From IMG/VR virus record IMGVR_UViG_3300035703_000006, positions 124,001 through 188,000 of that record: 64,000 bases of DNA; one strand, given 5' to 3'. Position numbers and translations under genes: made by a program. Positions 54 through 4,916 of this stretch are shown here, one piece after another. Every line of letters starts with the position of its first letter. The stretch's first letter is position 1. The notes beneath the pieces are model-generated. The model did not search any database, was not told where the DNA came from, and was given only the letters and a program-made list of their open reading frames with translations.

Positions 54-1394
54 ATGACTGCTTCTATTGCACAACGCAATTCTACTACTAATCTCTGGGA
101 ATCTTTTTGCCAGTGGGTTACTTCAACCGATAACCGCCTTTATGTGGGTTGGTTCGGTGTTCTTATGATTCCAACGTTGCTTGCTGCAACGACTTGCTTC
201 ATCATCGCATTCATCGGTGCTCCCCCTGTGGACATTGATGGAATTCGTGAACCCGTTGCTGGTTCACTCATGTACGGAAACAACATCATCTCTGGTGCTG
301 TGATTCCTTCGTCCAACGCAATTGGACTGCACTTTTACCCCATCTGGGAAGCTGCTTCTCTAGATGAATGGCTTTACAATGGTGGACCTTTCCAACTGGT
401 AGTGTTCCACTTCCTCATTGGTATTTACTGCTATATGGGTCGTGAGTGGGAACTTTCATATCGTCTAGGTATGCGTCCTTGGATCATGGTTGCTTACTCT
501 GCACCTGTTGCTGCTGCAAGCGCAGTGTTCCTGGTCTATCCTTTTGGTCAAGGTTCTTTCTCTGATGCAATGCCTCTAGGTATCTCTGGCACCTTTAACT
601 ACATGCTTGTGTTCCAGGCAGAGCACAACATCCTGATGCACCCCTTCCATATGCTTGGAGTTGCTGGTGTGTTTGGTGGTTCTCTGTTCTCTGCTATGCA
701 TGGATCTCTTGTTACCTCCTCACTGGTTCGTGAAACCACTGAGAATGAGTCACAGAACTATGGTTACAAGTTCGGTCAAGAAGAAGAGACTTACAATATT
801 GTTGCTGCTCATGGTTATTTCGGACGCCTTATTTTCCAATACGCTTCCTTCAATAACTCCCGTTCGCTGCACTTCTTCCTCGCTGCCTGGCCTGTTGTCG
901 GTATCTGGTTTACTGCTCTTGGTGTAAGCACTATGGCTTTTAACCTTAATGGATTTAATTTCAACCAGTCTATCGTTGATGGTCAGGGTAAGGTTATTAA
1001 CACTTGGGCTGACGTTCTGAACCGTGCAGGTCTGGGCATGGAAGTGATGCACGAGCGCAACGCTAGATTTGTTGGTGTTGTTGCCTAGTAATAGGCATTA
1101 GAAAAATCGGGTTAAACGGGGAAACTCTCAAGTAGACAATCCCGTACCAAGTCAGAAAGGGTTTAAGTTTTCTGAAAGGTCTAACGACTAGGTAGTGAGT
1201 CCCAACAATAATCTACCCACGAATGCCCGACTCCTTAATAAACATAAGGATGAAGAGATAGTCTGAACTTACTGGCGACAGTAAGAAGTAAAGAATAAAG
1301 AGTCTTTACGATAACACAATTGCACAATTTCCCTCTTGACCTCGCAGCAGCAGAAGCAACACCAGTTGCTCTTACTGCTCCAACCATCGGTTGA
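54..1394 (+). CDS. psbA: Photosystem II D1 protein, spliced: join(54..1064,1323..1394), 360 aa
   Basis: D1 sequence runs to ...[10 protein letters not shown] at 1064. The missing C-terminus [23 protein letters not shown] is encoded at 1323-1394. The 344-aa ORF-track call reads into the intron. Confidence 0.98.
1065..1322 (+). mobile_element. Group I self-splicing intron (IA-like, no internal ORF), 258 nt
   Basis: 5' exon ends in U1064 and the intron ends in G1322. P1 CAACGCU(1058-64)/GGUGUUG(1074-80) with U.G at the splice site. P2 UGCCUA-GUAA-UAGGCA. P3 UCGGG(1107-11)/CCCGA(1226-30). P4 ACGGG/CCCGU. P7 GACUA(1186-90)/UAGUC(1259-63). Extra GGUAG/CUACC stem between P7 and P3. P8 UCCUUA/UAAGGA. 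P9 UUACUG-GCGA-CAGUAA. Confidence 0.96.
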
Positions 1395-1420
1395 GTTTCT
1401 TAAAAACTGAATAATAATCA

Positions 1421-1447
1421 GAGAGACCTTTACGGGTCTCTTTTTTT
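1421..1447 (+). terminator. Intrinsic terminator after psbA
   Basis: agagacc-tttacg-ggtctct hairpin followed by a T run. Confidence 0.85.
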
Positions 1448-1458
1448 GTGGTATAATA

Positions 1459-1492: not shown

Positions 1493-2098
1493 ATGGATTT
1501 GCACCAACTAGTAATATCTGAATGTGATAGAAGAGGATTGGAACTAATTCATCTTCCTGAAAAACTTGTTCGTCGTTCTACTGATGTGATTGTAAGTTGC
1601 CCTTGCACAGGTCAACGAAATATGAGCATAAGAAACTTTATTGTGACCTATGAAAAAGGTGGTGAAGCATTCTGTTGTAAAAGAAAAGCAAAAATTGGAA
1701 AGAATAATCCAGCATTTGGGAAACCAACTTGGAATGCAGGAACTGTTGGTGTATCAAAGAGTTATGGATTTTTCGGTTTTAAAGAAGAATGGTCTGATAG
1801 AGAAGATTACTTGTATTTTATTGAAACCATTTATGGAACATACAAGATAGGAAGGTCTTTTCATGGAATAAAATATCGTTTTACTGAAACTATAAAAGAA
1901 CTTGGTGAATGGAAAGCAACTCATAAAGAAGTGTTTGATTGTGAGAGATACATTTTGGATGCATATAAGCAGTATCAAAAGAAGATTAGTGGTATAATTG
2001 GAGGGTCGGAGCACTTTACAAAAGAACTGCCGATACAAGAAATCATAGAATATGCAAACCAAAATCTTCAAAAAATGATAGAATACCTAAATACCTAA
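1493..2098 (+). CDS. Putative free-standing homing endonuclease: N-terminal Cys-containing region, NUMOD3-like motif, C-terminal GIY-YIG-like (T5orf172/Seg-type) domain
   Basis: YLYFIETIYGTYKIGRS...E...GGSEHF nuclease-like motifs; KIGKNNPAFGK NUMOD3-like motif; CPC/CCK; sits directly after the intron-containing psbA. Confidence 0.72.
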   Translation: MDLHQLVISECDRRGLELIHLPEKLVRRSTDVIVSCPCTGQRNMSIRNFIVTYEKGGEAFCCKRKAKIGKNNPAFGKPTWNAGTVGVSKSYGFFGFKEEWSDREDYLYFIETIYGTYKIGRSFHGIKYRFTETIKELGEWKATHKEVFDCERYILDAYKQYQKKISGIIGGSEHFTKELPIQEIIEYANQNLQKMIEYLNT

Positions 2099-2112: not shown

Positions 2113-2820
2113 ATGGACGCACAGGAACTTCGCAATCTTCAAGAAGCATATAATAAGGTCCATCAACTTGATGAAATTTCTTCTGAACTTGCTAAAAGAG
2201 CAGGAGAAGAGAGGATGAATAGAACTTTTGCTCTTATGCAAAAAGATTGGAAAGAAGGTAGAAAGAAACCATCATTAGAGTTTCAAAAATCTTATAAGAA
2301 ACAACAGGATGACGAAAGAAGATATAGAAGAAAATTAAAAAAAGAACAAGTAGATATTTACGACATCATCCTCTCACATTTTCTTGATGAAGCATCTGGT
2401 GGTATTATAGGTGGAAAAACTTTTTCTTCTGGAAGTTCTCAATTAAAACAAAAACCAAAAAGTTCTTCAAAATTGGGTAGAAAAATTGGTAAATCTTTGA
2501 GTGGTTTTAGTTTCGGTGATGAAAAACCAAAAGATATTGTTAAAAGAACTAGAAATGCTAGTGATAGTGAATTGAATACCTTATCAAGAAGAAGTGATGA
2601 AAAGGAGCCAGGAAAAGGAAGAAGCAGAAGTGGTAGAGAGTTTCAGTTAAAAGTTATTGAAAGAGAGAAGAGAAGAAGAAGTAAAACGAATGAAGAAGTA
2701 GATATTTACGACATCATCCTCTCACATCTTCTTGATGAAAGATATGCTGAAACTCTAGAAGCAGCAGAAGCAATTATGGTGAATATGAGTGAAGAGTGGA
2801 GACAAAGTATTCTTGGTTGA
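2113..2820 (+). CDS. Basic, K/R-rich phage protein with duplicated VDIYDIILSH(F/L)LDE motif
   Basis: 235-aa ORF. Starts MDAQELRNLQEAY and ends ...AETLEAAEAIMVNMSEEWRQSILG, both of the type I recognise from cyanophage hypothetical proteins. Confidence 0.8.
   Translation: MDAQELRNLQEAYNKVHQLDEISSELAKRAGEERMNRTFALMQKDWKEGRKKPSLEFQKSYKKQQDDERRYRRKLKKEQVDIYDIILSHFLDEASGGIIGGKTFSSGSSQLKQKPKSSSKLGRKIGKSLSGFSFGDEKPKDIVKRTRNASDSELNTLSRRSDEKEPGKGRSRSGREFQLKVIEREKRRRSKTNEEVDIYDIILSHLLDERYAETLEAAEAIMVNMSEEWRQSILG
2350..2739 (+). repeat. 42-bp direct repeat (2350-2391 and 2698-2739, 1 mismatch)
   Basis: gtagatatttacgacatcatcctctcacat[t/c]ttcttgatgaa. Confidence 0.95.
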
Positions 2821-2993: not shown

Positions 2994-3027
2994 GTGTATA
3001 ATAATATAAGTATCTTTGGGAATAATT

Positions 3028-3786
3028 ATGAAAAGAAAACCTGACGGAAGTGTTCATATTAGAGTTTTGTCAAATGGAACTGAAGTCGTAACGAAAAAAA
3101 TAGATGGAAAATGGGTACATCAAAAAAAATATCCCAATGGATATGTAGATAAATGGGGAAATTTTTCACAAAGAGGTAGAGGTGATAATAGTCCAGTTAT
3201 TGGAAAATCTGGACCAAGACCAGAACTTCGTGGTTTATGTCACGGAATAGGAATTAATGATGTTCATATTCCATATTTTACTAAAACTAAAATATGGAAA
3301 AAATGGAATGATATGTTAGGTAGATGTTATTCTAGAACCACTCAAAAACAAATTGAAAAAAATGCTCCTTGGGATGGATGTTCTGTTGATTCTCGATGGC
3401 ATAAACTTTCTGCATTTAAAGAATGGGTAGAACAATGGGAAGATTATGAAAATAAAGAATTGGATAAGGATATTTTAATACCTGGAAATAAAATTTATGG
3501 ACCAGATACATGTTTGATGGTTAGACCAGTTGTTAATTTATGGTTTAAACCAAATTCAAGTAAAAATGACCTTCCCAAAGGTGTCTGTATTAATAATAGA
3601 ACTGGTAGACCATATCGTGCTCAAATAACTCCTATCGGGGGAAAAAGAACACATCTTGGTTATTTTGACACTCCAGAAGAAGCATATGAGGTATATCATC
3701 AAAAATGGAAAGAACAAATTTTAGTTTTAATAGAACAAGAAAAAGATGTGATTGTAAAAAATGCTCTAACAAAATATGCTCAATGA
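3028..3786 (+). CDS. HNH-like homing endonuclease with C-terminal AP2-type DNA-binding domain
   Basis: GIGIND...WNDMLGRCYS...GCSVDSRW...ELDKDILIPGNKIYGPDTC; C-terminal LPKGVC...YRAQI...HLGYFDTPEEAYEVY. ATG at 3028 preferred over TTG at 3016. Confidence 0.8.
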   Translation: MKRKPDGSVHIRVLSNGTEVVTKKIDGKWVHQKKYPNGYVDKWGNFSQRGRGDNSPVIGKSGPRPELRGLCHGIGINDVHIPYFTKTKIWKKWNDMLGRCYSRTTQKQIEKNAPWDGCSVDSRWHKLSAFKEWVEQWEDYENKELDKDILIPGNKIYGPDTCLMVRPVVNLWFKPNSSKNDLPKGVCINNRTGRPYRAQITPIGGKRTHLGYFDTPEEAYEVYHQKWKEQILVLIEQEKDVIVKNALTKYAQ

Positions 3787-3854: not shown

Positions 3855-4916
3855 ATGACTTCTTCTACACTTTCACAACCTATTTCACAGAGAGGATGGT
3901 TTGATGTCTTGGATGACTGGCTTAAACGAGATCGCTTTGTCTTTGTGGGTTGGTCTGGATTACTTCTTTTTCCCACTGCTTATTTGGCCCTTGGTGGCTG
4001 GCTTACTGGCACAACGTTTGTTACAAGTTGGTACACCCACGGGTTGGCGAGTTCCTATCTTGAGGGTGCTAATTTCCTCACAGCAGCTGTGTCGACGCCT
4101 GCAGATTCTATGGGTCATTCTCTTCTTCTACTTTGGGGTCCTGAGTCTCAGGGGGATATCATCAGGTGGTTCCAACTTGGGGGACTCTGGACTTTTGTGG
4201 CACTCCATGGGGCCTTTAGTTTAATTGGATTCATGCTTCGCCAGTTTGAAATTGCTAGACTGGTTGGTATTAGACCTTACAATGCCATTGCATTCTCTGG
4301 TCCTATTGCTGTATTTGTATCTGTATTCTTGATGTATCCACTGGGTCAGTCCAGTTGGTTCTTTGCACCATCATTTGGTGTTGCTGCTATCTTCAGGTTC
4401 CTTCTGTTCCTTCAGGGTTTCCACAACTGGACCCTCAACCCCTTCCATATGATGGGAGTTGCTGGTATACTGGGAGGAGCACTGCTTTGTGCGATTCACG
4501 GAGCAACTGTAGAAAATACATTATTTGAAGATGGAAATCAAGCAAACACTTTTAAGGCTTTTGAGCCTACGCAGGAAGAAGAAACTTATTCTATGGTTAC
4601 TGCAAACAGATTCTGGTCACAGATCTTTGGGATTGCTTTTAGTAACAAGCGTTGGCTTCATTTTTTCATGCTATTTGTCCCTGTCATGGGTCTTTGGACT
4701 TCCAGCATTGGTATCATTGGGCTTGCCCTTAATCTTCGTGCTTATGACTTTGTAAGTCAGGAAATTAGAGCAGCAGAAGATCCAGAGTTTGAGACATTTT
4801 ACACAAAAAATGTGCTTCTTAATGAAGGTCTTCGTGCGTGGATAACACCAGTAGACCAACCACATGAGAACTTTGTGTTCCCAGAGGAAGTTCTACCTCG
4901 CGGTAATGCACTTTGA
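3855..4916 (+). CDS. psbD: Photosystem II D2 protein
   Basis: Full-length D2 (…[15 protein letters not shown]…[10 protein letters not shown]), uninterrupted. Confidence 0.99.

What the first reader, a model, noticed from the sequence alone, without database searches (positions are those of the whole stretch)
1058..1322. ORF-less group I intron in psbA with a fully readable ribozyme core
Seen: 258 nt separate ...ERNA from HNFPLDLA. P1 (with the U.G splice-site pair), P2, P3, P4, P7, an extra stem between P7 and P3, P8, P9 and terminal G are all identifiable. Established: a short group I intron near the 3' end of psbA is known from cyanophage S-PM2. I cannot tell whether this is the same lineage or exact site; the length and the downstream nuclease may differ.
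Basis: partly seen in the sequence, partly recalled or inferred. Interest (0 to 1): 0.6.

Follow-up and report, generated by a model that had tools for sequence, protein, structure and literature searches.

The report
Second-site self-splicing intron in phage psbA
A cyanophage photosystem gene (psbA) carries a 258-base self-splicing group I intron with no gene of its own, of a different lineage and 6 bases away from the one known case (phage S-PM2), and it always sits beside a free-standing nuclease gene that probably moves it.

Summary
Window 1065-1322 (258 nt) interrupts psbA between ...HERNA and HNFPLDLA.... It scores 61.5 bits on Rfam RF00028 (cut-off 50, E 3e-15). The same intron sits at the same site in at least 51 other IMG/VR contigs. 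On 19 distinct copies, 98.8% of cells pair and 14 pairs show compensatory changes, including one between the exon's Arg codon and the internal guide.

It is not the S-PM2 intron. The insertion site lies 6 nt downstream (A336|H337 instead of R334|N335). Global identity to S-PM2-type introns is 51-56%. It has a P2 and a P9.1 that S-PM2 lacks.

No F-CphI gene follows. The gene about 100 nt after psbA (1493-2098, 201 aa) is an unannotated protein whose distant relatives carry CapR-type zinc-finger and T5orf172 (GIY-YIG clan) domains, a putative homing-endonuclease architecture. All 31 relatives with enough upstream sequence follow an intron-bearing psbA. Near-identical introns elsewhere are paired with F-CphI-like or phrog_314 nucleases.

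Best reading: a working ribozyme mobilised in trans ("collaborative homing"). Splicing and cleavage remain untested. This is a new variant of a known kind.

The parts
54..1064 (+). psbA (D1) exon 1, 337 codons, ends ...MEVMHERNA
   Evidence: ORF list. Megablast to 318 cyanophage psbA genes annotated as photosystem II D1, all ending at 1063/1064.
1065..1322 (+). ORF-less group I intron, 258 nt, subgroup IA-like
   Evidence: RF00028 at 61.5 bits, E 2.9e-15. Same intron at the same site in 51 other IMG/VR contigs. Covariation supports the structure.
1058..1080 (+). P1: exon 1058-1064 plus intron 1065-1066 pair with the internal guide 1072-1080. The splice-site wobble is U1064.G1074.
   Evidence: 9 pairs, 100% paired in 19 copies. 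Pair 1058/1080 switches C-G to G-C, tracking the third base of the Arg codon.
1083..1096 (+). P2 hairpin with a GNRA loop (GUAA); absent from the S-PM2 intron
   Evidence: 5 pairs, one compensatory change C-G to U-A. Alignment with S-PM2 shows a gap here.
1107..1111 (+). P3 5' strand (pairs with 1226-1230)
   Evidence: 5 invariant pairs. Recovered by MFE and RNAalifold and by the Rfam alignment.
1116..1145 (+). P4 (1116-1121/1140-1145) enclosing P5 (1126-1128/1134-1136)
   Evidence: All pairs kept in 19 copies and invariant, so this is neutral evidence. Matches the Rfam core.
1147..1179 (+). P6 (1147-1148/1178-1179) and P6a (1152-1158/1169-1175)
   Evidence: 5 pairs with compensatory changes. 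Copy L017 changes four of them at once.
1184..1190 (+). P7 5' strand with bulged C1185. G1186-C1263 is the putative guanosine-binding pair. It pairs with 1259-1264, forming a pseudoknot with P3.
   Evidence: 6 invariant pairs. The sequence matches the conserved GACUA / AUAGUC core of RF00028.
1191..1217 (+). P7.1, the extra hairpin between P7 and P3 (stem 1191-1195/1213-1217)
   Evidence: 2 pairs with compensatory changes and one G-U change.
1226..1230 (+). P3 3' strand
1232..1250 (+). P8 hairpin
   Evidence: Paired in the 258-nt class. Replaced by a shorter hairpin in the 251-nt class, which also has a GGAA rather than GUAA L2 loop.
1259..1264 (+). P7 3' strand
1268..1285 (+). P9 hairpin with a GNRA loop (GCGA)
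   Evidence: 7 pairs, one compensatory change G-C to A-U.
1288..1309 (+). P9.1 hairpin
   Evidence: 4 pairs with compensatory changes.
1322..1322 (+). Terminal (omega) G, the last intron base
   Evidence: Invariant in all copies. Exon 2 begins at the next base.
1323..1394 (+). psbA exon 2 ([23 protein letters not shown], then stop)
   Evidence: Aligns with the S-PM2 3' end.
1420..1450 (+). Terminator-like hairpin and T run after psbA. A -10-like TATAAT follows at 1452-1457.
   Evidence: consensus scan only.
1493..2098 (+). Free-standing 201-aa gene (ORF201). It has an N-terminal Cys4 CapR-like domain, a NUMOD3-like motif and a C-terminal T5orf172/GIY-YIG-like domain. Proposed trans-acting homing endonuclease.
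   Evidence: No direct Pfam or PHROG family above threshold. Profile search gave 224 relatives. Among 40 of them, T5orf172 is in 11, MUG113 in 4 and CapR in 4. 39 IMG/VR homologues all lie 143-173 nt after the start of psbA exon 2, and all 31 with enough upstream sequence have the intron.

Best explanation
Window 1065-1322 is a functional, ORF-less group I (IA-like) self-splicing intron in the psbA gene of a 247-kb T4-like cyanophage.

Splicing (inferred from anatomy). The internal guide 1072-1080 pairs with the last seven exon bases and sets the 5' splice site at U1064.G1074. An external guanosine bound at the P7 pair G1186-C1263 attacks there. The terminal G1322 then takes its place, and the exons are joined to restore ...[13 protein letters not shown].... 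By standard D1 numbering (established knowledge) this stretch holds the Mn-cluster ligands His332, Glu333, His337, Asp342 and Ala344. Unspliced RNA stops 8 codons into the intron, so D1 depends on splicing.

Lineage (shown). This intron is separate from the S-PM2 one and occupies a site 6 nt downstream.

Mobility (inferred, about 0.55). The intron has no nuclease of its own. It is carried into intron-less psbA alleles by the adjacent free-standing gene 1493-2098, a CapR-like/T5orf172 (GIY-YIG clan) putative homing endonuclease. On this reading the nuclease cuts intron-less psbA near the insertion site and is kept off its own genome by the intron. This is the 'collaborative homing' scheme shown for S-PM2 and F-CphI.
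For: Ribozyme.
- RF00028 scores 61.5 bits against a cut-off of 50, E 2.9e-15.
- MFE and RNAalifold recover P1-P6a, P7.1, P9 and P9.1 without guidance; the single-sequence MFE fold also recovers P8.
- On 19 distinct natural copies, 98.8% of 1288 cells pair. 14 pairs show double-sided changes, against 0-3 when partners are slid by 1-3 columns. 0 of 500 shuffles reach this.
- The exon Arg-codon third base covaries with the guide base 1080.
- The terminal G and the U.G wobble are invariant.
- The intron is more conserved (median 96.1% identity to the window over 55 loci) than the psbA exons around it (84-86%).

Different site and lineage.
- The S-PM2 intron lies at L001:26329-26540, between CGT and AAT.
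- Global identity is 51-56%, with only a 38-nt blastn match. By contrast, identity is 73.5% over 151 nt to a Clostridium phage intron.

Nuclease partnership.
- 39 ORF201 homologues in IMG/VR all lie just after psbA. All 31 with enough upstream DNA carry this intron, and none follows an intron-less psbA.
- Of the 22 intron-bearing contigs found by the site pattern that have downstream DNA, 13 have ORF201, 8 have an F-CphI-like gene and one has a phrog_314 'homing endonuclease'.
- Introns 98.5% identical to the window's pair with each of the three nuclease types.
- S-PM2-site introns have F-CphI-family genes in 36 of 45 contigs and never ORF201.
- ORF201's relatives carry T5orf172, MUG113 and CapR domains. 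Y108, K118, G120, R129, E151 and E173 are conserved. This architecture is described as a putative homing-endonuclease family in PMC8096241 and PMC10448857.
- Collaborative homing, and splicing of the S-PM2 intron in vivo, are described in PMC6083498, PMC3984707 and PMC5931967.
Against: - No spliced product was seen. Metatranscriptome contigs from 4 runs hold intron pieces and one unspliced piece (993-1342), but no 1064-to-1323 joint. Contigs cannot settle this, and intron-less alleles would mimic a joint.
- The core helices P3, P4, P5 and P7 never vary, so covariation says nothing for them.
- ORF201 itself matches no nuclease family above threshold: CapR 17.4 bits against a cut-off of 24.2, NUMOD3 E 0.15, and no direct T5orf172 hit.
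- Fold matches to the GIY-YIG nucleases Slx1 and HIGLE are weak (Z 4.4-4.5). Foldseek found nothing.
- The ORF201-intron association could partly reflect common descent of one cassette.
- ORF201 (86% nt identity) is no more conserved than the exons, while the intron is. The two have not obviously swept together.
Confidence: 0.78

Rival explanations
1. The intron is real and splices, but ORF201 is not its homing partner. ORF201 could be an ordinary 'intron-less homing' nuclease aimed at another nearby site, or a DNA-binding regulator derived from a nuclease (as CapR is). On this reading it travels with the intron only through linkage.
For: ORF201 has no direct nuclease-family hit. CapR itself is a domesticated, non-cutting relative (PMC8096241). 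ORF201 is much less conserved than the intron (86% against 96%). All ORF201 homologues are 84-96% identical in protein, so they could be one inherited cassette.
Against: The association is 31 of 31. ORF201 was never found away from an intron-bearing psbA. The same slot is filled by F-CphI-like or phrog_314 nucleases when ORF201 is absent. The GIY-YIG-type residues Y108, R129 and E173 are kept across distant relatives.
Confidence: 0.3
2. It is the S-PM2 intron lineage that has slid 6 nt along psbA, not an independent intron.
For: The gene is the same, the site is only 6 nt away, the core motifs are shared, and F-CphI-like genes sit beside some copies.
Against: Global identity is 51-56%, and the only blastn match is 38 nt of the universal P3-P4 core. 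The P1 guide differs, and there are an extra P2 and P9.1. The 3' half is closer to a Clostridium phage intron (73.5% over 151 nt). The F-CphI-like genes at this site are only 37-46% identical to S-PM2 F-CphI, against 72-84% at most S-PM2-site loci.
Confidence: 0.06
3. It is a decayed, non-splicing remnant, and this psbA copy is a pseudogene.
For: No spliced RNA was observed. Two related contigs (L050, L054) carry copies with internal deletions.
Against: Both exons are intact and in frame. The score is above Rfam's cut-off. There are 14 compensated pairs. The intron is more conserved than the coding exons.
Confidence: 0.03
4. The intron spreads by reverse splicing into psbA RNA followed by reverse transcription and recombination, without any nuclease.
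For: The guide pairs with 7 exon bases and tracks exon changes. That is what RNA-level site recognition needs.
Against: No reverse transcriptase is evident nearby. A nuclease gene is present beside every copy that could be checked. The guide-exon covariation is needed for forward splicing in any case.
Confidence: 0.08

Closest known systems
psbA group I intron of Synechococcus phage S-PM2 with free-standing F-CphI (collaborative homing; Millard 2004, Zeng 2009, PMC6083498, PMC5931967)
   Same: [quoted passage not shown]
- It interrupts the codons for the Mn-cluster ligands.
- A free-standing putative nuclease gene starts about 100 nt after the psbA stop, with psbD further downstream.
- It has an extra hairpin between P7 and P3.
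   Different: - The site is 6 nt downstream (A336|H337 instead of R334|N335).
- The intron is 258 nt instead of 212 nt.
- Identity is 51-56%.
- It has P2 and P9.1, and the internal guide differs.
- The adjacent gene is a T5orf172-like protein, not Endo VII-type F-CphI.
- Splicing and cleavage are shown for S-PM2 but not here.
CapR-domain / T5orf172 putative homing endonucleases of vibriophage ICP1 and other phages (PMC8096241, PMC10448857)
   Same: - An N-terminal Cys-rich zinc-finger-like domain with a weak CapR hit.
- A C-terminal domain whose relatives match T5orf172 or MUG113.
- A free-standing gene beside a conserved phage gene.
   Different: - ORF201 does not itself reach the Pfam thresholds.
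- It lies beside an intron insertion site in a photosynthesis gene.
- No member of that family is known to me as a partner of an ORF-less intron.
Group I introns of Firmicutes phages (for example the tape-measure gene intron of Clostridium phage phiCP13O / CPQ4; Streptococcus thermophilus phage introns)
   Same: These are the best nucleotide matches in the phage collection: 73-76% over about 150 nt, covering P6 3' to the 3' end.
   Different: - The host gene and the 5' half differ.
- The Clostridium intron spans about 1 kb between the two annotated exons, which leaves room for an ORF.
T4 td / nrdB / nrdD introns (subgroup IA2)
   Same: A phage IA-type core with an extra element between P7 and P3. 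There are short blastn matches to many T4-like phages.
   Different: Those introns carry their own endonuclease ORFs (established knowledge). This one has none.

Membership tests
Group I catalytic intron (Rfam RF00028) | Covariance-model score at or above the curated gathering score | tested here: met
   61.5 bits against 50, E 2.9e-15, full model 1-253. The default whole-window scan missed it.
Group I catalytic intron (Rfam RF00028) | P1 formed by the 5' exon and an internal guide, with a U.G wobble at the splice site | tested here: met
   U1064.G1074. 9 pairs kept in 19 copies, with one exon-guide compensatory change.
Group I catalytic intron (Rfam RF00028) | Conserved core P3-P8 with the P3/P7 pseudoknot, a bulged base and a G-C pair in P7 | tested here: met
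   All pairs are present in all copies. P3, P4, P5 and P7 are invariant, so support comes from sequence and the model, not from covariation.
Group I catalytic intron (Rfam RF00028) | Terminal guanosine as the last intron base | tested here: met
   G1322, invariant in 23 complete copies.
Group I catalytic intron (Rfam RF00028) | Guanosine-dependent self-splicing that gives ligated exons | tested here: inconclusive
   Read laying on 4 metatranscriptomes showed intron and unspliced pieces but no 1064-to-1323 joint. Only contigs were available. This needs RT-PCR or an in-vitro assay.
Subgroup IA | Extra paired element(s) P7.1/P7.2 between P7 and P3 | tested here: met
   One hairpin at 1191-1217 with 2 compensated pairs. 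Only one hairpin is seen, so I do not assign IA1, IA2 or IA3.
S-PM2-type psbA intron lineage | Insertion between the Arg334 and Asn335 codons | tested here: not met
   The window's intron lies 6 nt downstream. 45 complete S-PM2-site introns (of 50 contigs matched) are all at CGT|AAY.
S-PM2-type psbA intron lineage | Sequence relatedness beyond the universal core | tested here: not met
   51-56% global identity; a single 38-nt blastn match.
Collaborative (trans) homing system | An ORF-less intron with a free-standing nuclease gene next to the interrupted gene | tested here: met
   No ORF in the intron. ORF201 starts 98 nt after the psbA stop. Co-occurrence is 31 of 31. Other nuclease families fill the same slot.
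Collaborative (trans) homing system | The nuclease cuts the intron-less allele at or near the insertion site, and the intron confers immunity | not testable with these tools
   This needs purified protein and DNA substrates.
T5orf172 / GIY-YIG-clan homing endonucleases | A match to the T5orf172 (PF10544) or GIY-YIG profile | tested here: inconclusive
   There is no direct hit. Homology is transitive: the ORF201 profile finds P0023 at E 3.5e-12 over the region where P0023 matches PF10544 at 21.5 bits, cut-off 20. 11 of 40 relatives match T5orf172.
T5orf172 / GIY-YIG-clan homing endonucleases | GIY-YIG-like fold and conserved Tyr / Arg / Glu | tested here: inconclusive
   Y108, R129 and E173 are conserved. 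The AF2 model has pLDDT 82.5. The matches to Slx1 (Z 4.5) and HIGLE (Z 4.4) are below a convincing level. Foldseek found none.
F-CphI (Endo VII-motif) homing endonucleases | Sequence similarity to F-CphI / phrog_2633 | tested here: not met
   ORF201 has no PHROG hit, whereas S-PM2 F-CphI hits phrog_2633 at 5.8e-42. ORF201 has no tblastn hit in the phage collection.

The most novel reading that the evidence does not exclude
Cyanophage psbA has at least two independent intron 'landing sites' 6 nt apart in the codons for the Mn-cluster ligands. At the newly described one, three unrelated free-standing nuclease families compete to mobilise one nearly invariant ORF-less ribozyme: ORF201 of the T5orf172 type, a divergent F-CphI type, and a phrog_314 type. 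ORF201 would then be the first T5orf172-family enzyme with a predictable natural target, the intron-less A336|H337 junction. That would make the poorly characterised T5orf172 homing-endonuclease family directly testable.
Probability: 0.45. Interest if true: 0.65.

Novelty: new variant of a known kind. Interest (0 to 1): 0.5.

Why it matters
psbA introns in cyanophages are the textbook case of 'collaborative homing', in which an intron without a nuclease is paired with a nuclease without an intron. In S-PM2, splicing is light-dependent and gates D1 production (PMC5931967).

A second, unrelated intron sits 6 nt away. It is present in dozens of uncultured phages from fresh, estuarine and marine waters and in none of the isolate genomes searched. 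It is partnered with different nuclease families. This shows that the stretch of psbA is a recurrent target of selfish elements, and it gives a natural experiment in how ribozymes and nucleases converge on one site.

It also has a practical consequence. Gene callers will truncate D1 at 1088 in such genomes, and psbA-based diversity surveys will mis-handle these alleles.

Tried and rejected
- Whole-window Rfam scan at gathering threshold: 0 hits. A 500-nt scan and the own-genome search found the intron above threshold, so I treat the blank as a filter artefact.
- tblastn of ORF201 against 50,697 phage records: no match.
- Pfam, PHROGs and NCBIfam on ORF201: nothing above threshold.
- Foldseek against the PDB: nothing at E <= 0.001.
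- Profile search against PDB sequences: only a chance-level hit.
- VIA wide: GIY-YIG nucleases at Z 4.4-4.5 only. I report this as weak.
- RNA evidence: one run search and one read-laying run on four metatranscriptomes. No exon-exon joint was seen. Only contigs were available, and intron-less alleles of other phages would look the same. This is neither support nor refutation.
- I did not build or search the joined exon 1 + exon 2 sequence. The exons were handled separately by reference.
- Scan of 185,579 species genomes for anything but C after ...AAYGCT: 16 hits, none an intron. Four are Nostoc divergent D1 genes with Tyr in place of His337, a fifth Nostoc hit does not continue as psbA, and the rest are chance. 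No cellular psbA intron at this site was found.
One PHROG call failed on a wrong frame.
- Zeng 2009, Millard 2004 and Millard 2010 are not in the held library. I could not check whether environmental psbA introns at this second site were already noted there.
- The HNH endonuclease at 3016-3786 was considered as the intron's partner and rejected. It occurs in none of the other site-pattern loci with the complete intron.
Full report
WHAT IS THERE

The window is bases 124001-188000 of a 247,112-bp IMG/VR virus record rated complete. It opens with psbA, followed by psbD at 3855-4916. psbA is about 84% identical at the nucleotide level to the psbA of many T4-like Synechococcus phages.

- Exon 1 runs 54-1064 and ends ...MEVMHERNA.
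- The frame then runs into a stop at 1086-1088.
- Exon 2 begins at 1323 with [23 protein letters not shown] and stops at 1392-1394.
- The 258 nt between them (1065-1322) follow a T and end in G, as group I introns do.
- A shift of one base would also keep the frame, but it would put C before the splice site and T at the intron end. The boundaries 1064|1065 and 1322|1323 are therefore the ones that fit.
- All 318 megablast matches to phage psbA genes break off at 1063/1064.
They were read separately by reference.

IS IT A GROUP I INTRON?

Yes, by every test available here.

- Rfam RF00028 matches 1055-1285 over the whole model at 61.5 bits (gathering score 50), E 2.9e-15. It is the only such match in the phage genome.
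- The default scan of all 64 kb returned nothing. That is a speed-filter effect and would have wrongly refuted the finding.
- A plain MFE fold of 1055-1332 recovers P1, P2, P3, P4, P5, P6a, the hairpin between P7 and P3, P8, P9 and P9.1, with z -3.63.

RELATIVES AND COVARIATION

A scan of IMG/VR for psbA with anything but C after ...AAYGCT gave 25 contigs. Every one carries this intron at this site, 258 or 251 nt long. With the loci found through the neighbouring gene, the union is 51 contigs besides the window's own.

I aligned the 19 distinct sequences (alignment A2) and wrote a structure by hand, with P3/P7 as a pseudoknot. The results:

- 98.8% of 1288 cells form standard pairs.
- 14 pairs have changes on both sides, against 0-3 when the partners are slid by 1-3 columns. 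No shuffle in 500 reaches the observed values.
- Compensated pairs lie in P1, P2, P6, P6a, P7.1, P9 and P9.1.
- RNAalifold finds 13 compensated pairs on its own.
- P3, P4, P5 and P7 never vary, so they are supported by the model and by sequence only.

Two details are telling. First, the third base of the Arg codon (1058, C or G) changes together with guide base 1080 (G or C), so the guide tracks its exon. Second, the 251-nt class has a GGAA rather than GUAA L2 loop together with a different, shorter P8. That would fit an L2-P8 contact, which is inference only.

COMPARISON WITH S-PM2

In S-PM2 (NC_006820) the 212-nt intron lies at L001:26329-26540, between CGT (Arg) and AAT (Asn). It scores 87.8 bits.

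- The window's intron lies between GCT (Ala) and CAC (His), 6 nt further on. In standard D1 numbering this is A336|H337 against R334|N335. That numbering is established knowledge, with a +1 offset in this protein.
- The two introns share the universal core motifs, but global identity is only 51-56%, with one 38-nt blastn match.
- The window's intron has a P2 and a P9.1 that S-PM2's lacks.
- Its best matches in 50,697 phage records are introns of Clostridium, Streptococcus, Bacillus and T4-like phages. One example is 73.5% over 151 nt to the tape-measure intron of phiCP13O. No cyanophage is among the 40 best-ranked records listed, and no record covers more than 57% of the intron.
- A parallel IMG/VR scan for the S-PM2 site gave 50 contigs. 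That round number may be a cap. Their introns are 199-212 nt.

Cyanophage psbA therefore has two occupied sites 6 nt apart, held by different intron lineages. No cellular genome among 185,579 species representatives has an intron at the new site.

THE NEIGHBOURING GENE

After a terminator-like hairpin (1420-1443) and a TATAAT comes ORF 1493-2098 (201 aa). It is not F-CphI.

- It has no PHROG, NCBIfam or tblastn match. Its only Pfam hits are sub-threshold: CapR (residues 8-52, E 0.005) and NUMOD3 (65-77, E 0.15).
- The word search found ten unnamed relatives.
- A profile search of 1.8 billion representatives found 224, most sharing the C-terminal half.
- Of 40 scanned, 11 match T5orf172, 4 MUG113 and 4 CapR (best 5e-35). 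Others match DUF723, DUF4379 or NUMOD3.
- In P0023 the T5orf172 match (107-185) coincides with the part aligned to ORF201.
- K118, G120, E151 and E173 are invariant. L107, Y108, R129 and L155 are nearly so. This pattern is like the Tyr/Arg/Glu set of GIY-YIG nucleases.
- The AF2 model is confident (pLDDT 82.5), but its structural matches to the GIY-YIG nucleases Slx1 and HIGLE are weak (Z 4.4-4.5).

A CapR-type zinc finger followed by T5orf172 is the architecture described for putative homing endonucleases of phage ICP1 and others (PMC8096241, PMC10448857). I therefore call ORF201 a probable, unproven member of that group.

ASSOCIATION BETWEEN NUCLEASE AND INTRON

- All 39 ORF201 homologues in IMG/VR begin 143-173 nt after the start of psbA exon 2. 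All 31 with enough upstream DNA have the intron at this site, two of them with internal deletions. None follows an intron-less psbA.
- Conversely, of the 22 contigs found by the site pattern that have downstream DNA, 13 have ORF201, 8 have an F-CphI-like gene (37-46% identical to S-PM2 F-CphI) and one has a phrog_314 'homing endonuclease'.
- Introns 98.5% identical to the window's occur with each of the three nuclease types.
- At the S-PM2 site, 36 of 45 contigs have an F-CphI-family gene, mostly 72-84% identical to S-PM2 F-CphI. None has ORF201.
- The HNH-AP2 endonuclease at 3016-3786 occurs in none of the other site-pattern loci with the complete intron, so it is not the partner.

HOW IT MOST LIKELY WORKS

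Shown:
- The ribozyme anatomy and its conservation.
- The distinct site and lineage.
- The invariable presence of a free-standing nuclease-like gene.

Inferred:
- The intron splices itself out of psbA RNA and restores the Mn-ligand segment of D1.
- Having no nuclease of its own, it is copied into intron-less psbA when the neighbouring nuclease cuts that allele near the junction and repair uses the intron-bearing genome. The intron protects its own genome by splitting the target. This is collaborative homing as in S-PM2 (PMC6083498, PMC3984707).
- Splicing might also regulate D1 supply, as reported for S-PM2 (PMC5931967).

One observation complicates a simple joint-sweep picture. The intron is far more conserved (median 96.1%) than the exons (84-86%) or ORF201 (86%). 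Either the whole RNA is under tight constraint, or the intron moves more often than its neighbours.

WHAT IS MISSING

There is no evidence of splicing. Four metatranscriptomes contain intron pieces (for example 1079-1301 and 1086-1322) and one unspliced piece (993-1342), but no joint. Contigs cannot decide this. There is no evidence of cleavage by ORF201.

The key papers on environmental psbA introns were not available. An earlier mention of the second site cannot be excluded. PMC5931967 does say that psbA introns are widespread in marine metagenomes.

VERDICT

It is a new variant of a known kind: a second-site, second-lineage ORF-less psbA intron with a different putative nuclease partner. 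Interest is moderate.

Noticed in passing
window 3016-3786 (+): A free-standing HNH endonuclease (phrog_953, E 8e-59) with an AP2-like C-terminal stretch lies between psbA and psbD. It is found in none of the other site-pattern loci with the complete intron, so it looks like a separate, recent insertion.
   Followed up: partly
window 2113-2820 (+): A 235-aa ORF of unknown function carries the motif VDIYDIILSH(F/L)LDE twice. Its only weak hit is phrog_3708. Only its last 56 residues recur, in one related locus (L012).
   Followed up: no
L050:2400-3010 and L054:2400-3010: Two contigs from one sample series carry this intron with internal deletions. L054 lacks about 63 nt (P4-P6). L050 lacks the whole 3' half and the first two bases of exon 2. 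These are either decaying copies that would kill psbA or assembly artefacts.
   Followed up: partly
window 1216-1322 and 1086-1322 (read laying records 8 and 16): Two metatranscriptome contigs stop matching exactly at the last intron base and continue for 30 letters unlike the window. This could be a divergent exon 2, a k-mer overhang, or a circle or other processed form. The letters were not shown.
   Followed up: no
window 1065-1322 compared with 54-1064 and 1323-1394: The non-coding intron is more conserved between contigs (median 96.1% identity) than the flanking psbA coding sequence (84-86%) or the neighbouring ORF201 (86%).
   Followed up: partly
L004, L006, L011, L012, L016, L018, L021, L023 (about 140-680 nt after the intron): F-CphI-like genes beside the new-site intron are only 37-46% identical to S-PM2 F-CphI. 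Most of those beside S-PM2-site introns are 72-84% identical. This may be a sub-family with a shifted target.
   Followed up: partly
L026:3834-4505 (-): In one contig the slot right after the intron-bearing psbA holds a 224-aa phrog_314 / phrog_15526 'homing endonuclease'. This is the same PHROG as S-PM2p181, the gene after F-CphI in S-PM2.
   Followed up: partly
L118, L120, L123, L126 (Nostoc MAGs): These are divergent D1-like genes reading ...MHERNA-YNF(S/F)LDL..., with Tyr where the Mn ligand His337 should be. They were picked up by the site pattern and are not introns.
   Followed up: no
window 1-64000: The default whole-window Rfam scan at gathering threshold reported no family, although the intron scores 11 bits above the cut-off when a short stretch is searched. 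No tRNA genes were found in the window.
   Followed up: yes
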